From Entomortierella parvispora E1425 (lineage: Eukaryota; Fungi; Mortierellomycota), in contig BQFW01000006.1 of the NCBI GenBank assembly GCA_020891255.1, positions 1,860,001-1,924,000 of the forward strand: 64,000 nucleotides of DNA. Reading direction: 5' to 3'. Shown one piece after another: positions 2,298-20,737 of this stretch (the first letter of the stretch is position 1; every line of letters starts with the position of its first letter). The notes beneath the pieces were generated by a model, which saw only the letters and a program-made list of their open reading frames with translations, did not search any database and was not told the origin of the DNA. A program made the position numbers and the translations under genes.

Positions 2298-5269
2298 TCA
2301 GAGCTTTACATTGCTGCCGTTGGCGCTAGCGCCCACGCTGTAAAGACCTAATCCACGCTGTTCGATATAGGATCTGGCAGCACCTAGTCGGATCCGGCCG
2401 GTATCAATCATATGGGCCGTTACTTCATCCACAGAGGCAGGTGGTGTGCCCGCTGAGATGGCAATATTGCGTGCATGCAACGCCATGTGACCTTTTTGGA
2501 TGCCCTCCGTTACAAGAGCCCTCAATGCTGCAAAGTTTTGGGCCAGACCAACTGTTACCATGGCCTAAAAAAACAAAAAAATACAAAACGACAAGTTAGT
2601 TTAAACAGAATAGAAAACCCGATTGAGAAAGATGAGAGGCATTTCCTTACCATGGCCAGCTGCTTTGAGTCTGGGTATCGCATCACGCCCAATGTAAACG
2701 CGTGGATCGGGTTTGTACTCAAGACACCGCCTTTGGTTCCCACCATTATTGGCATCTCCAACTCGCCACAGAAAACCAGGCTCTCCTGCCCTTTATAACC
2801 TTGTCGTAACCGTTCTTCGTCCTCTTCAATCCAGTACTTAGTAAGAGGCTTGTAGGCATCCCCTCTGCAGATCTGACCATCGCTGCCACCAACATCTGAG
2901 ATATCTTGGCGCTCTCCGTGAGTTCTTTTCTGTCCTGAACCGGTCCCATTAATATATGGTGGTGCTGATGAGGACGCGGGTGACGATGACAACGATGGAG
3001 ACTCATAAGACCGCTCAGAATAGGTGCCTGCACCACTAGCCCAAGCATGGGCTCCAGCCTCGATCGCTCGCCAATCCTGACCCGTTGCCAAGGCGACGGC
3101 ATCAATTCCGTTCATAATGCCCTTGTTATGAGTAGCTGCGCGGTATGGATCCAAATCTGCCCACTCGAATGCCTCCAGCATTTTCACTGCAACATCTTTG
3201 CCCAGCAAGGATTTGTAGCCCATGTGCGAAAATGGAAGACGGAAAGTCGCCTAAACAGCATCAATTAATAATAAACAAAGTCAATCCCAAGTGCAAGTAT
3301 AGACCAACCCTAGCTCAGGTTAAAACACACAAAAGAAAACACTCTTTTACCTTGGCGATTCGATCCACGTTCAAATTGCTCAAAATCCGTACTCCGATGC
3401 GACCTCCACTCATTTTAGCCAAGAAAGGCGCAATCCCTTCCGCAACCGTATTGGCACAATTGGCTCCCATCGCGTCTCCAACGTCCACATGCAGATGGAC
3501 CACCAACCATTCAGAACACCTTCCTTTTCCAGACGGGCTAGAGTTGGACTCCGAAACTGAATCCCTGCATGGAAGATTTTGAGATACGACCACGCCATGT
3601 TTGACCAGTAAATCCTGTCCTCTGAAACTCTCACGCTGACGATGTCTCCGGATCCGATGAAATGTCACCCTTTGCACGCCTCCACCGCGTAGTACCATGT
3701 TGGTACAGTATTCGTTAGCCTCGCTCTTGATCTCATCAACGTGCTCCTTCATCCTGTTCAAGATCGCGTCCATGTTCTCGTCCAAGATATCCAAAAGTTG
3801 AACCTGGGCCACAATCATGTTCCGCTCTGGAGCCCAGGCTTGGAATCCCTGATACGTCGAGATTGTCTTGGCTGCGCTTGAGACTGCCGCCACAACCGAT
3901 GGCTCCTCGATGGCCATAGGGACCACATAAGGAGTGCCATTGATTGTAAAGTTGAAGGCAAGGCCTACTGGCATTCCCATTGTTCTAATAACGTGGTCAG
4001 GAAGGGGGTGGTGTAACGAGTTAATTTTACGCGTTCAGTTGGCGAGTCCTTCGAGTGAATGATGATAGCGTAGATCACGACAACGTACCCAATACAGTTC
4101 TCGATCATGTTGTTAGCAATCTGCTCGTCCAGTCCATGAACAGGGAATGGCGCACCCTCTTGATCAGAAGTCGCCAGAATGGCGTCCAATCGGGCGTCTA
4201 ACGAAAGATCTCCTTCTAACAGGTGTCCATTCGGCGTACCGATCATCTTCCGTTGTTCTTGCAGGTTAGAGATCACAGTTGCCTTGCGTTCACGCTCCAG
4301 TTGATCCCGACGCTCCTCCTCTGTCATAGCAACATCCTCATCTGGTTGCTGTTGTTGCTCTGGCTTAACTTTGGAAGTCGCAGTAACGGCCAAAGGTGCT
4401 GTCTGCCCAGATAGATCACGTTCCAGAGCTAAGCGGTCCTGGTCGGTCTGACTCATGCCATCTGTGTACTCTAAAGGCGATATGGCTCCCGTTGGAGAAG
4501 ATTGGCGACGCGGACTGACGCTGCGCTCTGAAGATAAGGAGGAGGGTGAGTCTCCCGATTCCGACCTTGTCAGATGAAGTGCGATCGCCGTCTTATTATG
4601 AGCCAGAGAAGAAGCCGAGCCTGAGACTGAACCAGCTCCAGATCCTGGGTACCGTGGCACCGGCATGTTCAACGGCAACAAGTAGGTCGCTGATCCTGTA
4701 GGCCCAGAGATAGATGATGTTGAAGATGGTGGGGAATCGGAGGACGTGGTTGAATTTGCCTGACTGCTGGTGACGCCATTCATCGCGGTCATGGCCATGG
4801 CCAGCGACCGTGTGGGTCCAAGGTTGGGCGTGGACTGACCAGAGGTCTTGGCCGAGGTTTGGGTAGAAGCAAAAGAGTCGAGCGAGGAAGGCCGGGTCAG
4901 GTGCGGAAAGGCCAAGCCCAGCTGAGTTCTTCGTTCCTTGATGGTCTTCTTGTAAAACCCGGACCAGTACGCGTGGGTCTGAATAGACTCTTGCGTGGAC
5001 GATGCCGCGGTAGCAGTGGTATTGATTGAGAGATGCTGAGGGCTATGCTGTGTGTTGGACACGTACGACATGGCGGAGGAGGACAATGTCCGGGAAAGAA
5101 CGGTTGTAGCCAACGAAGGGTTCATTTTGGCCTTAAAGGCAGATGCATCAGGTGGAGGTTGCATCGTGTTGCCGCTGAGGAGATTGTCGGTGGAATCAGT
5201 CAAGCCGGCAGCGGTTCTCAGATGGGGCCGTGGAGGAGGAGGCGCTGGGAGTGGATGAGTTATGGGCAT
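2298..5269 (-). CDS. mvaA: Class II (bacterial/archaeal-type) HMG-CoA reductase, soluble, with long Ser/Thr-rich insertions
   Basis: Exons 5269-4089, 3984-3351, 3250-2651, 2564-2298. Motifs [58 protein letters not shown]. No transmembrane sterol-sensing domain. The ORF-track start at 5365 is GTG; the first ATG is 5269 and the true start is uncertain. Confidence 0.92.
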
Positions 5270-6041: not shown

Positions 6042-9000
6042 TTACTCTCTTCTAGGTAAAGGATATGGTAAAGCCTGCGCATGACGATGGAGAGGAGGTG
6101 GGGGGGGAGGAGGGTACACATGTTGATCTTCGATACTCCTGTTGCGGTCAGAGTCCACCCCATTGTCATGGCTTCCATGGTACGAATGCTCCTGATGCTG
6201 CGAATGATGGTGATGCTGCGACTGCTGCTGGCTCGACGCCGACGATGAGGAATGGTGGTGTACTCGATCTCCAGAAGCGCTCAACGCCATCAAACTAGCC
6301 AGCGCGGAGCTGGTTTTCAAATCATTCACCAACGCTGCAGCATCCGCAGCAGACGCCGGAGCTTCAGAGCTTTCACCAGCCGAGACAGGTAGAGAGCTAG
6401 AAGGCGCCGACGATGACTTGTTCCCACCATTAGATCCAAGAGCTTGATCTAGGCCATTCAAGACAGCAGCCGCTCGACCTAGAAGCATAGATAGATGTGA
6501 TACCTCCCTCTGCAAATCCTCCCTTGTTTGCTGCAAAACATCCTTGTTGGGCAAGTTGCTGCCACTGCTAGTGGAAGTTGCAGCGCCAGAACCGGCATTT
6601 GTCCCTCCAGGGAGGGTTGTAGTGGACGATGACGATGGGTCTACTGGCGGTGAAGAAACTCTCCTGGAACCATGCACTGAGCTATAGGATGAATGGTGAT
6701 CCCTGTCCTGCGAAGACTGGTGCAAAATCTCGGATGCACGGGGCAAAGGTTGATGCTGACTCGGGCTTCCAGAGTGGTGAGACTGCGAGTGAGAGTGAGG
6801 CATTGAGATGGGGGGCAGACGGTGCGGTTGCTCATCCGAACCTTCATTATCCCTTCGATCGCCTCCCTTGTCATGCGAGCCGTGAATCGGGTTAAGTAGC
6901 GAAGGTAGACCGCGATGGCCATAAGAGCTTCCATAGCCTGATCGGCCTCCGTTGCTAGTGTGATGGCCACTGCCAGAGATACTGCCTTGGTTTCCTGCAG
7001 ATCCAGATGAATGTGATGAACGAGGACCATAACCATTGGGAGGTGGGAGGATGTTGGCGCTCCGCGACTCATGGGTGGGCGATTGCGATCGATGGTATCC
7101 TCCGTGGGAGCTGGGGGAATCGACAGAGCTGTAATAGCTATATCCACGGCTAGGACCATCATCCCCATGGCGAGGATACATTGGTGGTGAGCTTGGATGT
7201 GCGTTGCTTGAATGAACAATGCCTGTCGAAGACAGTCGGGTATTAGAAGAAGATAAGGACATGGTAGCGTAACCAGGCAACCGTGTGTTCCAGCCAGAGG
7301 ACGAGACATGCGACGAGCTGTGCGATCCATCGTCCATGTCACTCGAGCGCGAGATTGGAGGTGCCTGATATCCCTGCATTGTGATCGCATGAGGTTCATG
7401 AGGCGGCGATCGCTGTTGATGAGGTAGTTGATAGTTGTAGTGAGGCAGGTGCATAGCATGCGAATAGGAATATGAAGGCTGACTTCGAATTGGCGCTGGC
7501 AGTGGGTTCATTGGGTAACGAGACATGCTCATTGATTGAGAAGAGGGATATGGCCCATTGCTCTGATGCACATTGGCTGAATACCGCGAAGATGAAGCCG
7601 TCGATGTTGGTGTTGGAGACGAGCGGTGCGACGAGAGGTCGGACGTGGATCTGTGCTGGTCCTGAGAGTTGGTGGAGGAATGGCTGTAAGCGTGGCTCTG
7701 GGTCGTGCGACCATGCGCTCCATGATTGTGTGACTGGTTGTGCGAACTCCGATGAACAGTCGTGTCGTATCGAGATCGCTCATGACTCTCCGCCTCCCGT
7801 TCCTCGTGTCGATTGCTTCCGATGTTCTCAATGGGGGACACACTTCGCTTGAGCGCAGTCAACGAGGATGAAACCGTTCCCGATGTCGACGTTGAGGTTG
7901 GCTCCTTCATCAGCCACTCTGTCTGTCCGTTGGCTGCTCTTTTAGGCACGATCATATCTTCGATAGCCGGAACCCGGGGACCTGCCGTTGCCTGCACTTT
8001 TCTTCGCTTGGTGGCCGTCTTGCCTTGCTTCGCAGCCTGAGCCTCCGCCTCTGCTGGCTCTAAATCCGACGCTGTAGGTGGTGCTTGCTTGCTCTGTGAG
8101 GTCGTTGCTGTTGCTGTTGCTGCCGCTGCTGCCTTTGCGCTCGCCTTCGCCTGTGCTTTCGTTGGTACTGCTGTTGTTTGCTCTGATCCTTCCTGTGGAA
8201 CCAGAGGTGGTGAGTTTGCTAGAAGATTGACACGCTTGCGCCGTTTGATGACTGCCCGCTTCATCGTAACTGGTCTGTGGACGTTATGAAGCTTGAAGTA
8301 GAGTCCACAAGCATTGCAAATGGTGTTGCCACCGCTATCACGTCGCCACAGAGGTGTAGTGGTTGTGCTGCAATTGGCACAGACGAGATGCTGTCTGTTG
8401 GTTTGGTGTTGGTTGAAGGACGGACATCCAGCACATGACTCTGCTCCTCCCTCTCCGTTACAGTTTCCATCTCCTGGACAAGAACCTGCGCACTCGCCAT
8501 CGCTTGTCTTTTCCACTTTTGCTGCTGTCTCGGAAGGGTCGGCAGAACCAGTGCCGTCCATTGCTTTTGATGGCGTAGATCCGGATCCAGCCCCTGAGGT
8601 AGTAGTAGGGTTGGGGTGTTCATCGACATCATCCATGTCACTACCACCTTCCTCACCCTTCTTGCCAGCGGGGTTGCGCTTGAGCCAAGGAGGCCTTGTG
8701 AGGTTCCTGGCTTTAAAGTAGAGTCCTGCGTGGGGCGAAATGATGACGGATAGCACAAAGCAGAGTAAGAAAGTGAGTGAGTGAGTGAGCGATGGACGCA
8801 GAAGAAAGGCACAGAAACAAGAATAAATATGTGAGTCAGGCGAGGGGCGTGGGTTTGTGTGGAGAGAGAGACAAAGAGACAGAAAAGAGAGGAAAGAAAG
8901 AGATCCACCACTCCAATCGAGATTGGTGTGTGCCCAAAATAAACATCCGCCCTGCCCTCGACCGTCTTTACTAGTCGCGTGGTCTGCGCACGGAAAACAA

Positions 9001-10324
9001 AAAGGGCGTGTCCCACACTGCCGCTCTCTCACTGCTGGTCGTCCTCTGGCCAGGTCGTGCTGCCCATCATCCGTGCACGCACTCAGAAGACAAGCAAAGA
9101 GACAAAAACTCTCTATTTCAGCCTCACACAGTCCTTTCGACCCAATCGATTGGATGGCCACGGATCGATGGTCAGATCGATCAACATGTTATCGACGGCC
9201 AGATATAATAGGGCTCTTTCTCTCCCTTTCCCACCCTTTCTCTTCGCCGCCCCAAATGAATTAAAAAGGTACCTACCACAAGCATTGCAAATTGTCTGTC
9301 CATTGCCGGCTCGTCGCCAAAGAGGTGTTGTCGTGGTGCCACAGTTGGCGCAGCTTGTTGCTGTCACCCCGACCTTGTTCTCTTTTTTGGCACCGCTGAC
9401 AGAGTTCTTGCGGACACGAGGAGATACCGACCGGATCGATGAAGGCTCTTCAGAGCCATGTGGTGGTAATCGTGGCGATGGCGTCGGTGTAACGGACATT
9501 CCCTCTGAAAATCTTGAAGAACATCGATCGCCAGCGGGTGAGTCCGGGGAGGCCAAACGTTTCCGACTGCCAGCAACGGTACTATTATGGCTGGTGCTGG
9601 GAACTGCGCTAGATAATGAAGCTGGGCGCGGCATAGAAACATCTTCCATCTCACTATCCTGATTCTGACTCTGTTGGCGATGGGACGGGCTCAAGGAGGA
9701 TTGGTATGCGGAGCTTTTCTGATGATGTGACAAGAGTTGTTCTCGCTCCATAGACCCTTGATCTTCCGTCTTCACATGGTGGCCCAGTGTGGTCGTTGTG
9801 GAAGGAGCACTGATAGCCTTGGCAGGCAAAGGCGACGATGTCGATAGCATGAGCAAGGAAGACAAGGCTGAGGACTCTGAAGAAGATTCGTCGGTGGTAT
9901 GAGATTGTTTTGACGATGTGGCTATAGTCGAAGTCAGAGTCTGGGGAGTGGATGAGGAGGTGCTCGATGATGGAGGTGAGCTGGAGGAGGCGATGGAAGA
10001 AGGGGTGGCAAGTAAAGCTGATGTTGCTACTCCTGCCGATGTTCCTAGAGTTGCTGCGGAGGTGAAGGGCGCTGATGATGACAAAGGTGTGGATGGAGAG
10101 TTGGATTGCACTGATAATATTGAAGAATGTGATGAAGATCCAGAGGGAGGGGATGCAGATAAGGGGGCAGCAGAGGTGAGAGCAGACGAAGAAGTATCTG
10201 GTACGGAGTCCGTGGCCATGGTTAGGTGCAGTGGCTGCAGAGTGCCCGTTGTTGTTTTGATTGCTGTGTCCTTATTTGCAGTATGTAGACCAGGCCCAGG
10301 TTGCTCTGACTCTGTAAGGGACAT
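6042..10324 (-). CDS. sreA: Iron-responsive GATA repressor (SreA/Fep1/Urbs1 type)
   Basis: Exons 10324-9277 and 8725-6042. Two CxxC-x17-CNAC GATA fingers flank the Cys-rich [19 protein letters not shown] (CX5CX8CX2C) segment. C-terminal coiled-coil-like [15 protein letters not shown]. Confidence 0.9.
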
Positions 10325-15718: not shown

Positions 15719-17628
15719 TTACGCCATTCGTCCCGCTGTCTTTCTGTTGGGGCGATGGAAAAATGTCCACACGGGCATGACCACCAGTCCAGCGGTAATC
15801 ATTAGGGACAAAGAAAGGAAATAGTAGGCTTGCGGGGTCGTGCTGGACGTCTTGGCAAAGATCTGGCCGTATGAAAGCACGGCCGCAGTGGAGGCTATAG
15901 AATCGATAACGGATAGAGCCCCCATGACCATCCCTGTATGGTCTGCAGGCATGATGGTCGTGATCACCGACATTCCAGAAGTTGCCCCGATGCTTCCAAG
16001 GATGGTCATGATCTCCGAAGTCACCAAGGTGGACACAGTCAAGAAGATAGGAAAGATGGAGAATCCGATGGCGATAATGGCTAGCCCGTACAAGTAGAAG
16101 GAGATGTCCATCTTCAGAGCTCTGATGGTCGAATTTGATGGCGCAGGGTCTACATCTTCTGTCGTAGGAACAGCACTGAAGGATGTTTCTCCGCTTCCAG
16201 TTGAAGAACTTTCCTCGATATTGTAGCGACTCTTGTAGGCTTTCTGAAGCAAAGGAAAGATCACAATGAATGTCACAGTTGTGACGATACCCATTCCGGA
16301 GAGGAAGATGCCATCCTCATACGCACCCCAATGAAAGAGCAGATTCGTCATAGGGTAAAAGTTGGACGACTGGCCTATTGCGACAAAATGTATGATGACC
16401 TTGGCCAGGAGCAGAAGGGAGGGTATGTACTTGGAGGGCATTCGCTCCGATACAACCACGTTATTTGGCAAGAACATCTTGAAGGGCTTGAAGATGGAGA
16501 GGGCTGATTGCTTAATTGTCTCCGCAACCCTGAGGAGGGTCGAACCAGACTTTGGAACTGCTCCATGGACAAGGCCCGGTACCATGTTCTGGGAAGAGTT
16601 GCGCGCCTTAGGCTTGAGGGACTCAGGAATGAAAAGCAGCAACATATAGAGTAAGGCAAACAAGACAACCACGATCCAGAGAGCTGTCGTCAGTTGTTCT
16701 GTGACCTTGGTGGTGTAGCCACCGAGGAACGGGCCGATAATACCACCCATGGAAAAAGCTGAAAGGGTCAGCCCAATTTGCATGCTTCGAGTAAGAGCCG
16801 GAGTGCAGTCAGCTATGAAGGCGATGAAGGAGAGAAGTATACCGATTATTATTTTTAATTGCTCCGGGTCTTTGGGCTTTCCAAGCGTCTGTCCAGTAGG
16901 ATGACTTACCAACATAGGCAAGAACCGCTGGGTTATAGAGATGACCCGTGGCCGTGGCCCCTTGGAAAACGCCGCCGATAGTGAGAAGAGTGGTTCCACT
17001 CAGGTTGCGTGGTGCGGCCGCGTAAAGTTGAATACAAGTTGCTATGATAGATACCAGAACGGACCATCGCAGCAAAAAGACGCGTCCGTACTTGTCGCTG
17101 AGAGACGTCCACCAGGTCAGGGTCATTAATGCTGATGGAGGTGTGTGAAGCGCGAGTTAGAAACCTCTTGAACACCGAATGCAAGAAAAAAAAGTTGACG
17201 TCCAGAATAAACATACAAATGATGCCTTCGGTGGCCTGAATACGACTTAGAATAACAGCAACTTGAGCAAGAACCTCGGGTGTTTTGCACAAGTCCTCTT
17301 CGTCTGAAAAGGAGAGTGAACTAGGAATGATCGGTGGTGTAGCATTCACAATGTCTCTGCAGATGATACGGATTCTGAGCTGAGCAGTGGGGCTGCCTTC
17401 AAAGCCAGCAGTGATGGCAAGAAAGAACAAAAATGGACACAGCCAGTAGATTGAAGGGCGACGGTACCACGGGCGACGAGCCAATTCTGCCATCCAAACA
17501 TCCTCGGCCTCATCGGCAGACAAGGGAGAAGGGATCTCTTGCTCTGGCGTTTCGTCCGTGTAGCTGCGGGAATCGTCAGACTCGAGTAATGGCTCCTGTT
17601 CTGGAGAATGAGAGTAGGAGGTCGACAT
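15719..17628 (-). CDS. MFS transporter, tandem paralog 2
   Basis: Exons 17628-17217, 17131-16910, 16812-15719. PWYRRPS, SDKYGR, ADCTP, N-terminal EQEPLL. Confidence 0.85.
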
Positions 17629-18437
17629 ATGGTGGCCTTGAAAATATAGAAACAGGAACAAGAACGGTAGTAAGAGAAATGCAATTGAGCAACACAGATA
17701 GAGAAAAAAAAGAGAGCAAGGAAAGAACCTCGTTATATACATAAAGACGGCAGTATACGAGAATTCACTAAGTTCGAAGAAAGGGCTGGCCCACGCCAAG
17801 CCAAGGTTTATTTGTTCGCGACGCTCTCACCTGCCAAGACTGAATGGGCAAAGGGAATGGACTCAGAGTGAATGGACTCAGAGTGGCGCCCTTGGCGCAC
17901 AAAAACGCAGTGGTGAGCGAGCTTTGGGCAATTGTTACTCGTCTGCTGATGCTCCCCGAGCCTTCAACACCAGAACTATCGCGTCTATCCCGCGCCCACA
18001 ACATTCAAGACAAGCCAATGTCGACATCACCGCGCCAAGTGCACTGCCCCAACCAACAACCGATCGCGCAGATCGTTGCCCAATTTAGAGTCATCACGTC
18101 GTCAAGAAAAGTGAAGAAAAAGGAAAAAAACGCCACCAACTCTAGCACAATGACGAAGGGATCGGTGGATTGGTCAAAAGTCCTTGATTGTGCCGAGGAT
18201 AACTGGTAGCCAGCTGGCTGGCATGTTTAGCTGAGCAAAGGAGACTTTCTTCGCTTGAAAGAACAAATCATGCAACAGAGAAGAGTTACACAAGACGAAC
18301 CCATCTGGGCCGAAGGCAGTAGAGGAGCCGAAGGGGTAGAGAAAATTGAATCTCGTTACATTTCCTGGCCATCTTTCTCTCTTCATCTCCATTCCACTCA
18401 ATTGCCATTACCTTTCTCACACTCTCTACAAGGACAA

Positions 18438-20737
18438 ATGACTCTTCTCAACAAAACAACGACGGGCGTTGCTGCGATTACCGCAGGTGCAGCTGTGTAC
18501 ATCAACAAGAAGCGGAACGAAGAGCCACTCCGTGGACCGTGGGATTCGAGCAAGGATGCCAATGTAAACTACGACTTTGTTATCCTCGGTGGAGGTACGG
18601 CCGGCTGTGTCCTTGCCTCTCGACTGGCTGAGGACCCCAAGGTCAGCATCCTGGTCCTTGAAGCTGGCTACTGTAAGTTTCCGTAACAGGTACCTTGTCG
18701 CAAGTCGCTACATCATCTTACTCCACGGGCTGAATATTAACTTTGGCTTCGTTGTGGAGAAATAGCTGATAATATTTCGCAGAGTATGACACCAGCTCTC
18801 GCAAGTCAGCTATGGGGCTCAGATAAGGACTGGAATTTGACCACAGTCCCTCAAGTCCATGCCATGGGACGAGTCATGCATCAGCCCAGAGGCAAACTTC
18901 TTGTAGGTTACGAGACTTGTGGATTGCTACTCTCAGGGTCGCCCTTTGTTTCGACCGCATCACTCACTCTTTTTTTTTTTTTTTTTATTGGTTCGCTCCA
19001 GGGGGGATCCAGGTATATCAAAACTTGTGAACAAAGAACCTGTAAAAAAACTCGAAGGAGAAATGGCGTCCCTCTAACTTTCCTCCCTCCTTTTGTGCAG
19101 CTCCGTAAACGCCATGATGTACCACCGTGGAGCAGCCTCTGATTTTGATGAGTGGGAACTCCTTGGGAATCCTGGCTGGTCTTATAAGGACTGCCTTCAC
19201 TACTTCAAAAAAGCTGAAGGACTGAACGACCCTCGTCTTCCTGTCGATCATCCTAGAGGACCTTTGACCAAACGCATCCGAAAACCCCAGTATGAAGAAT
19301 TTGAACCCGAGTTCCATTCTGAAACTGGGCCGTGGCAGATCACCTACCATCACCTTTTCGGCTCTTCTGAGGGATTCATTCGTGCCAGTATGGCTGAGGG
19401 CGTCCCTTTCAACAAGGATTTCAATGGCTCCAGTACAATTGGAACCAATCGTGTCCAGACCTTTATCCAGCGAGATGCTATTCGTAGCAGCGCTGCTCGT
19501 GCCTACCTTGGTCCAGGCCAGTTCTTGAATGAAGATGGAACCCCCAGAGCCGACCGTGGACGCGTCAGGATTGTCTATGGAGCCAATATCGTTCGCATTC
19601 TGGTGCAGATGCGACGTGGCGTTAAGGTCGCCGTTGGTGCCGAGTTTTTGGATTCAAACCGAGGTAGGTCATCGTTCACCTTTCTTAAACGTAACGATTT
19701 TCTGGTTTTCTCAATTATTATTTTTTTTTTTTTTTGTTCCTTTTTCATATACCGCGATAGAAATGCACACTGTCACCGCAGTGAAAGAGGTCCTTCTCTG
19801 TGCTGGAGCCTTTGGATCCCCTCATATTCTCTTGGCCTCTGGAATTGGCCCTTCTCCCCACAAATCGATTCCTCACATCCACACGCTGGCAGGTGTGGGT
19901 CGTAACCTCCAAGATCACTTGGGGGTTCCCATCAACTTTTTGGCTTCCCCCGACAGCCATACGGTCTCTCGAAAGCTTAGTCGAGTCCCCGGTATCCTCT
20001 ACGACTATAATGTGAACCGCACTGGATCACTCACTACACAAGGAGCTGAGGCTGTTATCTTTATACGATTGGAAGAGATGGCCCCAGAATTTGTAGCTCG
20101 CGAAAAAGCGAATGGCACCTGGCAAGATCGAGCCAGCGGACCGTCTGCGCCTCATGTTGAGATCCTTTTCGCACCCGCATTCATCCGCCATCACACCAGA
20201 GAGAAGGCTCCCGACAGTGAGAACTACTACAGCTTGATTGGACTGCTCCTGAACCCGGTTTCCGAGGGAACAGTGACAATCTCGGACGAAGTGAAGGGAG
20301 GTCGATTGGAGACCTTGATTGATCCTAACTACTTTTCGGACGACTTTGATACCCGTGTGATGGTCGAATGTGTGCGTTACATGCGGAAGATTGGTGAGAG
20401 GATGCGCCTGGACCCTGCCTGTGGAGGAGTAGAGATCTGCCCTGGAACAGACAAAGTCCCCTCCGATGACGACGCCAAGTTGCAGGACTATGTCAAGATG
20501 CACAGCTCTATTTACTACCACCCGACATCGACTTGCAGGATGGGACCCGCCTCGGACCCTCTGGCAGTCGTAGACGCACGGCTGAACGTTTATGGCATTG
20601 ATCGTCTTCGTATTGTGGATGCCAGCATTGCGCCAAAGCTTCCCGCGGCCCATACCTGCGCCATGTCGGTTATGATTGGAGAGAAGGCAGCAGACATGAT
20701 CAAAGAAGACTGGAAAGAGGTCCCTGCTAAGCTCTGA
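18438..20737 (+). CDS. GMC oxidoreductase (FAD-dependent alcohol oxidase/dehydrogenase family), paralog 1
   Basis: Exons from 18438-18672 through an 11-nt exon (19002-19012), 19101-19663 and 19761-20737. Motifs [58 protein letters not shown]. Confidence 0.92.

What the first reader, a model, noticed from the sequence alone, without database searches (positions are those of the whole stretch)
2298..5269. Spliced, soluble class II (bacterial-type) HMG-CoA reductase in a fungal genome
Seen: class II motifs [24 protein letters not shown] and GHMALH; no membrane sterol-sensing domain; three GT-AG introns, so bacterial contamination is unlikely; three Ser-rich insertions, the largest ~250 aa between ERRTQL and NMIENCIG. 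Established: fungi normally use ER-anchored class I enzymes, and class II enzymes are far less statin-sensitive. The cofactor helix here reads [14 protein letters not shown]. It lacks the Asp of the NAD(H)-specific Pseudomonas mevalonii enzyme and keeps the Arg before GGG seen in NADPH-using Firmicute enzymes. Inference: an old horizontally acquired or retained second HMGR, serving as a statin-resistant bypass or for mevalonate catabolism, possibly controlled through the disordered inserts.
Basis: partly seen in the sequence, partly recalled or inferred. Interest (0 to 1): 0.75.

Follow-up and report, generated by a model that had tools for sequence, protein, structure and literature searches.

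The report
Old bacterial-type HMG-CoA reductase in fungus
Beside its normal membrane-bound enzyme, this Mortierella-like soil fungus has a real, spliced gene for a soluble "bacterial-type" enzyme that makes mevalonate; it was inherited from very early fungal ancestors rather than recently borrowed, its kind was already mentioned in print for "some fungi", and what it does in the cell has never been tested.

Summary
Window 5269-2298 (minus strand) is a four-exon gene with three GT-AG introns. Its 893-aa product is identical to the NCBI protein [quoted passage not shown]. It passes NCBI's curated class II model (TIGR00532, 304 bits against a cut-off of 260) and fails class I (32 bits against 442). 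It keeps the catalytic residues E421, K648, D664 and H831, has no membrane segment, and its model matches solved class II enzymes (target TM-score 0.8-0.88).

It is not a recent transfer. Orthologs occur throughout Mortierellomycotina, Glomeromycotina, Endogonales, chytrids, Neocallimastigomycota, Blastocladiomycota, Capsaspora, Corallochytrium, a nucleariid and Amoebozoa. None appeared from Dikarya or Mucorales. The gene tree roughly follows the species tree. The three intron positions are shared across genera, and a congener's mRNA is spliced at all three.

The genome also has a canonical sterol-sensing class I HMG1 and a soluble class I copy (scan note s1-182058, on other DNA). The scan also read this same stretch a second time (s1-199048). 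Conaco et al. 2016 already reported class II genes in sponges, Capsaspora and "some fungi".

My best reading is a cytosolic, probably NADPH-using, sterol-independent mevalonate-forming isozyme; its function is untested. Side observation: most non-Mucoromycota orthologs carry an unannotated C-terminal domain with a terpene-synthase-like fold, which this gene lacks.

The parts
4089..5269 (-). Exon 1 (aa 1-393 plus 2 nt). It holds the N-terminal extension, the N-terminal helix WSGFYKK..ERRTQL, insert 1, and the start of the conserved MIENCIG dimer motif.
   Evidence: Gene model; identical to deposited protein P0181. The MPIT start is shared with M. alpina ortholog P0184.
3985..4088 (-). Intron 1 (104 nt, GTACGT..TAG), placed after NCIG.
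   Evidence: Same position in Lobosporangium and M. alpina. Removed from the mRNA of Mortierella sp. GBA43.
3351..3984 (-). Exon 2 (aa 394-605): EEPSVVAA, cofactor helix, insert 2, DAMGAN.
   Evidence: PF00368 125 bits and TIGR00532 123 bits on this exon alone.
3251..3350 (-). Intron 2 (100 nt, GTAAAA..TAG), placed after DRIAK.
2651..3250 (-). Exon 3 (aa 606-805): [16 protein letters not shown], insert 3.
2565..2650 (-). Intron 3 (86 nt, GTAAGG..TAG), placed after KQLAM.
2298..2564 (-). Exon 4 (aa 806-893 plus TGA): flap domain with GHMALH. The protein ends about 55 aa after the catalytic domain and has no further C-terminal domain.
4976..5269 (-). N-terminal extension, aa 1-98. It is rich in Ser, Thr and Pro and poorly conserved, with pLDDT below 50 over residues 12-84.
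4172..4897 (-). Insert 1, aa 125-366. It is mostly disordered and Ser-rich. It contains two islands conserved across Mortierellomycotina: aa 124-157 (Ser/Thr-rich [20 protein letters not shown]) and aa 308-345 (a charged helix).
3903..3905 (-). Codon of Glu421, equivalent to the catalytic Glu83 of the P. mevalonii enzyme.
   Evidence: Ungapped alignment to 1QAX; coordinates.
3687..3707 (-). Cofactor helix C-T-N-M-V-L-R (aa 487-493), just before GGG.
   Evidence: Motif definitions are quoted in bioRxiv 10.64898/2026.07.06.735745.
3510..3656 (-). Insert 2, aa 504-552, in the small cofactor-binding domain. Its first half is basic and conserved (RRH..RESF.GQDLLVK.GV); its second half is variable and Ser-rich.
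3122..3124 (-). Codon of Lys648, equivalent to catalytic Lys267.
3074..3076 (-). Codon of Asp664, equivalent to catalytic Asp283.
2774..3013 (-). Insert 3, aa 685-764. Aa 688-734 are Ser-rich with pLDDT below 50. Aa 735-764 are conserved and modelled as ordered.
2487..2489 (-). Codon of His831, equivalent to catalytic His381.
   Evidence: Ungapped stretch matching query 167-276 to 1QAX residues 316-425; coordinates.

Best explanation
The gene encodes an active, soluble class II HMG-CoA reductase. It is a homodimeric enzyme of the Pseudomonas/Streptococcus type that interconverts HMG-CoA and mevalonate using the Glu421, Lys648, Asp664 and His831 catalytic set. It belongs to an old eukaryotic clade of class II enzymes that early-diverging fungi inherited vertically and that Dikarya and Mucorales appear to have lost.

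In this fungus I read it as a cytosolic isozyme that works in the mevalonate-forming direction and probably accepts NADPH. It would run in parallel with the ER-anchored, sterol-sensing class I Hmg1 and so escape sterol-sensing and ER-degradation control. Mortierellomycotina lack the C-terminal domain found in most other eukaryotic orthologs. They carry instead lineage-specific disordered inserts with conserved Ser/Thr-rich islands, which are the likeliest sites of regulation (for example by phosphorylation). Low statin sensitivity would follow from the class II active site as a by-product.

Shown: the gene structure, class membership, catalytic residues, fold, lack of a membrane domain, taxonomic distribution, conserved introns, and expression with splicing in a congener.

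Inferred: enzyme activity, cofactor, direction, location, and regulation.
For: - Gene model identical to the deposited protein.
- TIGR00532 scores 303.9 bits against a cut-off of 259.95. Class I TIGR00533 scores 32.3 bits against 441.8.
- The catalytic tetrad aligns to 1QAX residues 83, 267, 283 and 381.
- AF2 model: 373 residues have pLDDT of 90 or more. The top 42 Foldseek PDB hits are all class II HMGRs (E 1e-37 to 1e-25, target TM-score 0.69-0.88). Class I hits come only at about 1e-13.
- No hydrophobic segment and no sterol-sensing domain.
- The own genome holds a class I HMG1 with a sterol-sensing domain and a soluble class I copy.
- Orthologs occur in all sampled Mortierellomycotina genera at 68-98% identity over the M. 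hygrophila query region (this gene 77%). They occur in Glomeromycotina, Endogonales, chytrids, Blastocladiomycota, Neocallimastigomycota, Capsaspora, Corallochytrium, Parvularia and Amoebozoa at 41-55%. The first bacterial proteins appear at about 45% or below in the list (to the Glomeromycotina query) and at 32-42% to this protein.
- Tree: a split with support 97 separates all named eukaryotes from all named prokaryotes. Support is 96 for the mainly fungal clade of 38 rows (25 fungi, a nucleariid, 12 unnamed), 100 for Mortierellomycotina and 97 for Glomeromycotina.
- Introns sit at the same three codon positions in Lobosporangium and M. alpina.
- 3-kb contigs from SRA runs SRR6256837, SRR6256838 and SRR6256840 carry an intron-free full-length ORF. 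The one compared (SRR6256840) equals the genomic locus of Mortierella sp. GBA43 minus exactly those three introns.
- Cofactor helix: NADH enzymes have Dx(V/L)xxxL and NADPH enzymes have (H/Y)xSxxxR. This gene reads CxNMxxR. Nearly all of the 65 rows on the eukaryote side read Cx(S/N)MxxR (a few have V or I at position 1, or T, G, K or R at position 3), sharing the polar third position and the Arg with the NADPH type.
- In most non-Mucoromycota orthologs the enzyme is fused to a domain whose model has the terpene-synthase/prenyltransferase fold. This ties the clade to isoprenoid metabolism rather than carbon-source catabolism.
- Conserved islands lie inside the inserts.
Against: - No eukaryotic class II HMGR has been assayed in any paper I could find.
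- No RNA run was listed for this species, so expression here is inferred from relatives.
- Cys at position 1 of the cofactor helix fits neither defined motif, so NADPH use is a guess.
- The curated model's name is 'degradative'.
- A 49-aa insert sits in the cofactor-binding domain and an 80-aa insert in the large domain. Either could change or abolish activity.
- The 98-aa N-terminal extension could be a targeting signal, so a cytosolic location is not shown.
- The suggested phosphoregulation rests only on conservation and composition. The AMPK/Snf1-like pattern around Ser129 lacks its basic residue in several orthologs.
- The tree is a quick search with SH-aLRT support only, is unrooted, and contains many unnamed rows.
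Confidence: 0.55

Rival explanations
1. Degradative enzyme. Like P. mevalonii MvaA, it would oxidise mevalonate to HMG-CoA, which HMG-CoA lyase then splits. This would let the fungus use or recycle mevalonate or mevalonolactone from soil or from its own turnover.
For: The best curated model is named 'degradative'. The closest solved structures by sequence score include the NADH-type Delftia and P. mevalonii enzymes. A class I enzyme already covers biosynthesis.
Against: The NAD(H) determinant Asp146 and the Dx(V/L)xxxL motif are absent, and Arg occupies the NADPH-type position. The name of TIGR00532 covers biosynthetic Gram-positive enzymes too. Many relatives are fused to a terpene-synthase-fold domain. 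No lyase or transporter partner is adjacent; the neighbour is a GATA factor.
Confidence: 0.15
2. Statin-tolerance gene. The enzyme would be kept because class II active sites bind statins poorly, protecting a soil fungus against statin-producing Aspergillus, Penicillium or Monascus neighbours.
For: Bacterial class II enzymes bind statins far more weakly than class I enzymes (established knowledge; structure 1T02 is among the hits). Mortierellomycotina are soil fungi. The enzyme carries no sterol-sensing domain.
Against: The clade is far older and broader than any plausible statin exposure. It includes marine and animal-associated protists, anaerobic gut fungi and obligate plant symbionts. No data show induction by statins. 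The statin sensitivity of this clade has not been measured.
Confidence: 0.12
3. Catalytically dead or repurposed protein. The large inserts would have turned it into a regulatory or scaffolding protein that binds HMG-CoA, CoA or NAD(P)H without turnover.
For: There are three large insertions, one of them inside the cofactor-binding domain. No activity data exist.
Against: All four catalytic residues and the substrate-binding motifs are intact. Core columns are up to 90% identical between genera. The inserts fall in loops, and the core is modelled at pLDDT above 90.
Confidence: 0.05
4. Recent horizontal transfer or bacterial contamination, for example from Burkholderia-related endobacteria of Mortierella.
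For: The protein belongs to a family regarded as prokaryotic, and Mortierellomycotina often host endobacteria (own knowledge).
Against: It has three spliceosomal introns at positions conserved between genera, and these are removed in mRNA. GC content matches the neighbouring gene and the introns are AT-rich. It sits on a 2.4-Mb contig next to a GATA-factor gene, and that neighbourhood is conserved in M. alpina and Lobosporangium. It shares only about 32-42% identity with any prokaryotic protein among 1.8 billion representatives, against 41-55% with other eukaryotes. The B. cenocepacia enzyme is not the best structural relative.
Confidence: 0.01

Closest known systems
Class II HMG-CoA reductase of Pseudomonas mevalonii (MvaA; PDB 1QAX, 1R31, 1T02)
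   Same: Same fold (target TM-score 0.81-0.88; 33-34% identity). Same catalytic Glu, Lys, Asp and His. Same ENVIG-type dimer motif and C-terminal flap with GHMALH. Soluble, with no membrane domain.
   Different: The bacterial enzyme has 428 aa, is NAD(H)-specific through Asp146 and Leu148, and is degradative. The fungal protein has 893 aa, with an N-terminal extension and three inserts. It has Cys and Asn at those two positions and Arg before GGG. It is encoded by a spliced nuclear gene.
NADPH-dependent biosynthetic class II HMGRs of Gram-positive cocci (Streptococcus pneumoniae 5WPJ/5WPK/3QAE; Enterococcus faecalis 7M1Z/7M3H)
   Same: Same fold and catalytic set. The Arg before GGG is shared, and the third position of the cofactor helix is polar, as in the (H/Y)xSxxxR motif.
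   Different: 28-30% identity. Position 1 of the helix is Cys, not His or Tyr. The inserts and extension are absent in the bacterial enzymes.
Eukaryotic class II HMGR genes reported by Conaco et al. 2016 (PLoS One, PMC4784904) in demosponges, Capsaspora owczarzaki and 'some fungi'
   Same: Same clade. Capsaspora P0020 groups with the fungal sequences on the eukaryote side of the tree. Those organisms also have a class I gene alongside.
   Different: That paper gives only a tree and a sentence. It does not name Mortierellomycotina and gives no domain architecture, cofactor motif or function. Capsaspora and most non-Mucoromycota orthologs have an extra C-terminal domain of about 400 aa that this gene lacks.
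Fungal class I Hmg1 (ER-anchored, with sterol-sensing domain), present in the same genome at contig C12 (locus L001)
   Same: Same reaction and the same Pfam family PF00368.
   Different: Different class: TIGR00920 767 bits and TIGR00533 580 bits for L001, against 25 and 32 bits for this gene. L001 has a sterol-sensing domain and many hydrophobic segments; this gene has none.

Membership tests
Class II HMG-CoA reductase (NCBIfam TIGR00532 equivalog; Pfam PF00368) | Score above the curated whole-protein cut-off of the class II model and below that of the class I models | tested here: met
   TIGR00532 303.9 bits (cut-off 259.95). TIGR00533 32.3 bits (cut-off 441.8). TIGR00920 25.2 bits (cut-off 778.35). 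PF00368 300.5 bits.
Class II HMG-CoA reductase (NCBIfam TIGR00532 equivalog; Pfam PF00368) | Catalytic Glu83, Lys267, Asp283 and His381 (P. mevalonii numbering) | tested here: met
   E421, K648, D664 and H831 align without gaps to those residues of 1QAX.
Class II HMG-CoA reductase (NCBIfam TIGR00532 equivalog; Pfam PF00368) | Class II three-dimensional fold (large domain, small non-Rossmann cofactor domain, C-terminal flap) | tested here: met
   The AF2 core has pLDDT above 90. The top 42 PDB matches are all class II, with target TM-scores up to 0.88. This is a predicted structure, not a solved one.
Class II HMG-CoA reductase (NCBIfam TIGR00532 equivalog; Pfam PF00368) | Soluble protein without an N-terminal membrane or sterol-sensing domain | tested here: met
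   No hydrophobic 19-residue window reaches 1.6. No PF12349 hit.
Class II HMG-CoA reductase (NCBIfam TIGR00532 equivalog; Pfam PF00368) | HMG-CoA/mevalonate oxidoreductase activity | not testable with these tools
   Needs an enzyme assay. No assay of any eukaryotic class II enzyme was found in the searched literature.
NADH-specific (degradative-type) class II subgroup | Cofactor-helix motif Dx(V/L)xxxL (Asp146, Leu148, Leu152 in P. mevalonii) | tested here: not met
   The helix reads C-T-N-M-V-L-R, with Cys, Asn and Arg at the three positions.
NADPH-specific class II subgroup | Cofactor-helix motif (H/Y)xSxxxR | tested here: inconclusive
   Arg at position 7 is met. Position 3 is Asn (Ser in many clade members). 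Position 1 is Cys instead of His or Tyr.
Long eukaryotic class II HMGRs (chytrids, Blastocladiomycota, Capsaspora, Amoebozoa) | Conserved C-terminal domain of about 400 aa following the flap domain | tested here: not met
   The protein ends about 55 aa after GHMALH. A profile of the domain (A1) finds nothing in the own genome. The domain is also absent in Glomeromycotina and Endogonales orthologs of 508-629 aa.
Long eukaryotic class II HMGRs (chytrids, Blastocladiomycota, Capsaspora, Amoebozoa) | Catalytic domain groups with the eukaryotic clade and carries its Cx(S/N)MxxR signature | tested here: met
   Tree split with support 97 and mainly fungal clade with support 96. The motif is present in nearly all of the 65 eukaryote-side rows.

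The most novel reading that the evidence does not exclude
The eukaryotic class II HMGRs would be a distinct, ancient Amorphea-wide enzyme line with two features of its own. One is a third type of cofactor helix, Cx(S/N)MxxR. The other is an ancestral fusion to a terpene-synthase-fold domain that senses or converts prenyl diphosphates. On this reading, Mucoromycota dropped that domain, and Mortierellomycotina replaced its control function with kinase-targeted disordered inserts. This gene would then be a sterol-independent, signal-controlled valve for mevalonate supply.
Probability: 0.2. Interest if true: 0.7.

Novelty: new member of a known kind. Interest (0 to 1): 0.45.

Why it matters
HMGR reviews and preprints from 2026 still describe class II enzymes as mainly, or even exclusively, prokaryotic. 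This gene is one well-documented member of a eukaryotic class II clade that spans early-diverging fungi, unicellular relatives of animals, and amoebae. Every clade member lacks functional data.

If the enzyme is active and uses NADPH, these fungi have a second route to mevalonate that escapes sterol feedback. This matters in three ways:
- for understanding isoprenoid and sterol control in oleaginous Mortierella strains used in industry;
- for predicting statin effects on chytrid pathogens and mycorrhizal fungi that carry the same gene;
- as a source of soluble eukaryote-adapted HMGRs for pathway engineering.

The gene itself is already annotated and is ordinary within its lineage, so the value lies in the family-level picture rather than in this locus.

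Tried and rejected
- **RNA evidence for this species.** The look-up of sequencing runs listed no RNA run. I used spliced transcript contigs of a congener instead.
- **Peroxisomal targeting.** The C-terminus ends in VKL, and ortholog C-termini are unrelated to each other, so a PTS1 signal was rejected.
- **The C-terminal domain as a separate gene in this genome.** The profile search found nothing. That tool warns that an empty answer without a positive control proves little.
- **Identifying the C-terminal domain by sequence.** There was no Pfam family, no PDB sequence match and no useful ESM Atlas lead. Only the fold comparison gave a signal.
- **AMPK/Snf1 site around Ser129.** The hydrophobic and basic pattern fits in most orthologs, but several lack the basic residue. 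I keep it only as a weak lead.
- **Functional linkage to the neighbouring GATA-factor gene.** The neighbourhood is conserved in three genera, but the relative orientation differs. I treat it as plain synteny.
- **Literature on function.** Seven full-text searches found no functional study of a eukaryotic class II HMGR and no description of the fusion domain.
- **Tree row selection.** Of about 159 candidate rows, I kept the 101 that covered profile positions 40 or lower through 380 or higher with at least 300 positions, plus four named Mortierellomycotina rows that failed this filter. About 54 fragments and partial models were left out. No class I outgroup was used because of its 14% identity, so the tree is unrooted.
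Full report
**1. What is in the sequence**

On the minus strand, an ORF opens at the ATG at 5269. With three GT..AG introns (4088-3985, 3350-3251 and 2650-2565; 104, 100 and 86 nt) it runs to a TGA at 2300-2298. The 2682-nt CDS encodes 893 aa.

I built this model only from reading frames and splice consensus. It is identical, residue for residue, to a deposited protein named [quoted passage not shown] (P0181, on a 2.4-Mb contig). This also names the organism and agrees with earlier scan notes.

The spliced product runs across each junction in register with bacterial enzymes: NCIG|TMGMPVG, DRIAK|ATFRLP and KQLAM|[10 protein letters not shown].

**2. Class membership**

- Exons 2-4 each hit PF00368 and the class II model TIGR00532.
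- The whole protein scores 303.9 bits on TIGR00532, above the curated cut-off of 259.95. It scores only 32 and 25 bits on the class I models.
- Against the PDB, the best sequence matches are class II enzymes (the top ten of eleven): Delftia, P. mevalonii, Burkholderia, S. pneumoniae and E. faecalis.
- Ungapped stretches put Glu421, Lys648, Asp664 and His831 on the catalytic Glu83, Lys267, Asp283 and His381 of 1QAX.
- An AlphaFold2 model from a 67-row alignment has 373 residues at pLDDT 90 or more. Its top 42 Foldseek matches are class II HMGRs (target TM-score up to 0.88; 24-34% identity). Class I structures follow at about 1e-13 and 14% identity.
- The protein has no hydrophobic segment, while the genome's class I enzyme has many. 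It has no sterol-sensing domain.

**3. Inserts**

Solved bacterial enzymes align to aa 367-503, 553-684 and 765-873. The N-terminal helix (WSGFYKK..ERRTQL, aa 99-124) is shared with all eukaryotic orthologs. That leaves four extra regions:
- a 98-aa N-terminal extension;
- insert 1, aa 125-366;
- insert 2, aa 504-552, in the small cofactor-binding domain;
- insert 3, aa 685-764.

They are rich in Ser, Thr, Pro, Gly, Ala, Gln and Asn (0.41-0.66 of residues) and mostly modelled below pLDDT 50. They are not uniformly free to vary, however. Across 35 Mortierellomycotina orthologs, four stretches are strongly conserved:
- aa 124-157, a Ser/Thr-rich stretch;
- aa 308-375, which includes a long charged helix;
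- aa 503-525, which is basic;
- aa 735-764.

**4. Cofactor helix**

A 2026 preprint summarises the Miller and Kung motifs as Dx(V/L)xxxL for NADH enzymes and (H/Y)xSxxxR for NADPH enzymes. This protein reads C-T-N-M-V-L-R (aa 487-493). By ungapped alignment, Cys replaces Asp146, Asn replaces Leu148 and Arg replaces Leu152.

In a profile alignment of 105 proteins, nearly all of the 65 rows on the eukaryote side read Cx(S/N)MxxR; a few have Val or Ile at position 1, or Thr, Gly, Lys or Arg at position 3. The rows on the prokaryote side are varied. The motif is thus a clade signature. It shares the polar third position and the Arg with NADPH enzymes, but Cys at position 1 is new. NADPH use is an inference from this, not a result.

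**5. Other HMGRs in the genome**

A six-frame search of the assembly finds three loci:
- Contig C12 carries a canonical class I enzyme with a sterol-sensing domain (TIGR00920 767 bits; PF12349).
- Contig C13 carries a 474-aa ORF that is a class I catalytic domain alone. This is the gene of scan note s1-182058.
- The third locus is the present gene, which is therefore an extra enzyme and not the only one.

**6. Distribution and origin**

An exhaustive search of 1.8 billion representatives with exon 2, two word-index searches and cluster look-ups give the following picture.
- Orthologs are present in every sampled genus of Mortierellomycotina (68-98% identity to the M. hygrophila ortholog; this gene 77%).
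- At 41-55% identity they occur in Glomeromycotina, Endogonales, many chytrids, Monoblepharidomycetes, Neocallimastigomycota, Blastocladiomycota, Caulochytrium, Capsaspora, Corallochytrium, a probable ichthyosporean, the nucleariid Parvularia, and Amoebozoa.
- No protein of Dikarya, Mucorales or Zoopagomycota appears in either list of the best 120. Both lists run down into unicellular holozoans and amoebae, and one runs into bacteria. Given how many Dikarya proteomes the database holds, the gene is probably absent there, but I could not search fungal genomes directly.
- The nearest named prokaryotes are Poseidoniales archaea, Teredinibacter and Myxococcales. The short, prokaryote-length rows share about 32-42% identity with this protein.

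I built a maximum-likelihood tree (105 rows, 424 profile columns, LG+C20+F+G4, quick search, SH-aLRT support).
- One branch (support 97) separates all named eukaryotes from all named prokaryotes.
- The fungi (25 named rows), Parvularia and 12 unnamed rows form a clade with support 96.
- Within it, support is 100 for Mortierellomycotina, 97 for Glomeromycotina and 99 for Blastocladiomycota.
- The three Mucoromycota groups sit together with support 87.

The tree is unrooted and about 54 partial rows were left out. It shows vertical descent within fungi. It does not show whether the clade began by transfer from a prokaryote.

Further evidence of long residence in the fungal genome:
- The three introns lie at the same codon positions in Lobosporangium and M. 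alpina, with different lengths.
- CDS GC (0.53) matches the neighbouring gene, and the introns are AT-rich (0.38).
- A GATA-factor gene is the neighbour in all three genomes.

**7. Expression**

No RNA run was listed for this species. For the ortholog of Mortierella sp. GBA43, contigs of about 3 kb assembled from SRA runs SRR6256837, SRR6256838 and SRR6256840 carry the intron-free full-length ORF. The contig from SRR6256840 aligns to the genomic locus in four blocks of 99.7-100% identity that skip exactly the three introns. A second species shows the same kind of intron-free contigs in three more runs. The gene is therefore transcribed and spliced as modelled in close relatives.

**8. Prior knowledge**

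Conaco et al. 2016 (PMC4784904) state that demosponges and Capsaspora have both HMGR classes and that class II genes occur in "some fungi". They propose a transfer into the opisthokont ancestor. My finding of amoebozoan members pushes that date back, if the amoebozoan copies are vertical.

I found no functional study. A 2026 fungal mevalonate review and a 2026 preprint still describe class II as mainly, or exclusively, prokaryotic. Public annotation already names this protein an HMG-CoA reductase.

**9. Side observation**

Orthologs outside Mucoromycota are 750-1400 aa long because of a conserved C-terminal region of about 400 aa with no Pfam family.
- A model of this region (pLDDT 72, pTM 0.77, from only 13 sequences) gives only weak Foldseek hits (E about 0.1). 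Almost all of them are class I terpene synthases or prenyl-diphosphate synthases.
- The independent structural aligner lists only such enzymes in its top 50 (Z 15.9-12.1; 231-285 aligned residues; rmsd 3.5-5.7 Å).
- The tool warns that helical models often reach Z of about 14 by arrangement alone. The uniformity of the list, in a domain fused to an isoprenoid-pathway enzyme, is suggestive but not proof.
- I saw no DDxxD-type motif in the consensus.
- The domain is absent from this gene and was not found elsewhere in the genome.

**10. Reading**

With high confidence (about 0.9), this is a vertically inherited, expressed, structurally intact class II HMGR paralog.

With moderate confidence (about 0.55), it works as a cytosolic, NADPH-accepting, mevalonate-forming isozyme outside sterol-sensing control, and the conserved islands in the inserts are its regulatory handles.

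The other roles carry lower odds:
- degradative role: 0.15;
- selected statin tolerance: 0.12;
- dead enzyme: 0.05;
- recent transfer or contamination: 0.01, effectively excluded.

**11. Verdict**

The finding is real and correctly described, but it is not new as a kind. It is an annotated member of a eukaryotic class II clade that has been mentioned in the literature and is common in early-diverging fungi. Interest is moderate, because the whole clade is biochemically unexplored, the field still overlooks it, and its cofactor motif and fusion domain offer testable questions.

Noticed in passing
Related proteins, not the window: e.g. P0015:450-867, P0020:555-1050, P0035:464-792, P0227:542-1015 (alignment A1): Most eukaryotic class II HMGRs outside Mucoromycota carry a conserved C-terminal domain of about 400 aa with no Pfam family. 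The predicted structure of this domain matches only class I terpene synthases and trans-prenyltransferases in the top 50 structural hits (Z 12-16). No DDxxD motif is evident. I found no description of such a fusion in the searched papers.
   Followed up: partly
Own genome, contig C13:2448035-2449171 (locus L002:1465-2886, minus strand): This is a third HMGR: an intronless 474-aa ORF that is a class I catalytic domain only (TIGR00533 531 bits), with no sterol-sensing or membrane domain. It is the gene of earlier scan note s1-182058. I did not examine its transposon context or its origin.
   Followed up: partly
window 6042-10324, minus strand: Directly upstream lies a large gene with two GATA zinc fingers (ORFs 6042-9161 and 9113-10324, probably joined by an intron). 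A GATA-factor gene is also the neighbour of the class II HMGR gene in M. alpina and Lobosporangium. There it is convergent with the HMGR gene rather than tandem, so the HMGR gene or the block has been inverted in one lineage.
   Followed up: partly
Related proteins P0325-P0341 and others; P0117, P0118, P0081 and P0069 in the tree: Many metagenomic proteins of 744-760 aa (the one named row is a Gammaproteobacteria MAG) fuse a class II HMGR to a GHMP-kinase domain (PF00288 and PF08544, mevalonate-kinase type). They are about 43-46% identical to the Glomeromycotina query and are among the nearest non-eukaryotic hits.
   Followed up: no
Related protein P0047 (877 aa): A class II HMGR annotated in the desert locust Schistocerca gregaria genome groups with the amoebozoan sequences in the tree. 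It may be a contaminant or symbiont sequence rather than an insect gene.
   Followed up: no
window 15719-17799 (minus strand) and 19529-20737 (plus strand): ORFs with a Major Facilitator Superfamily domain and a GMC oxidoreductase domain lie 10-15 kb from the HMGR gene. I saw no sign of a functional link.
   Followed up: no
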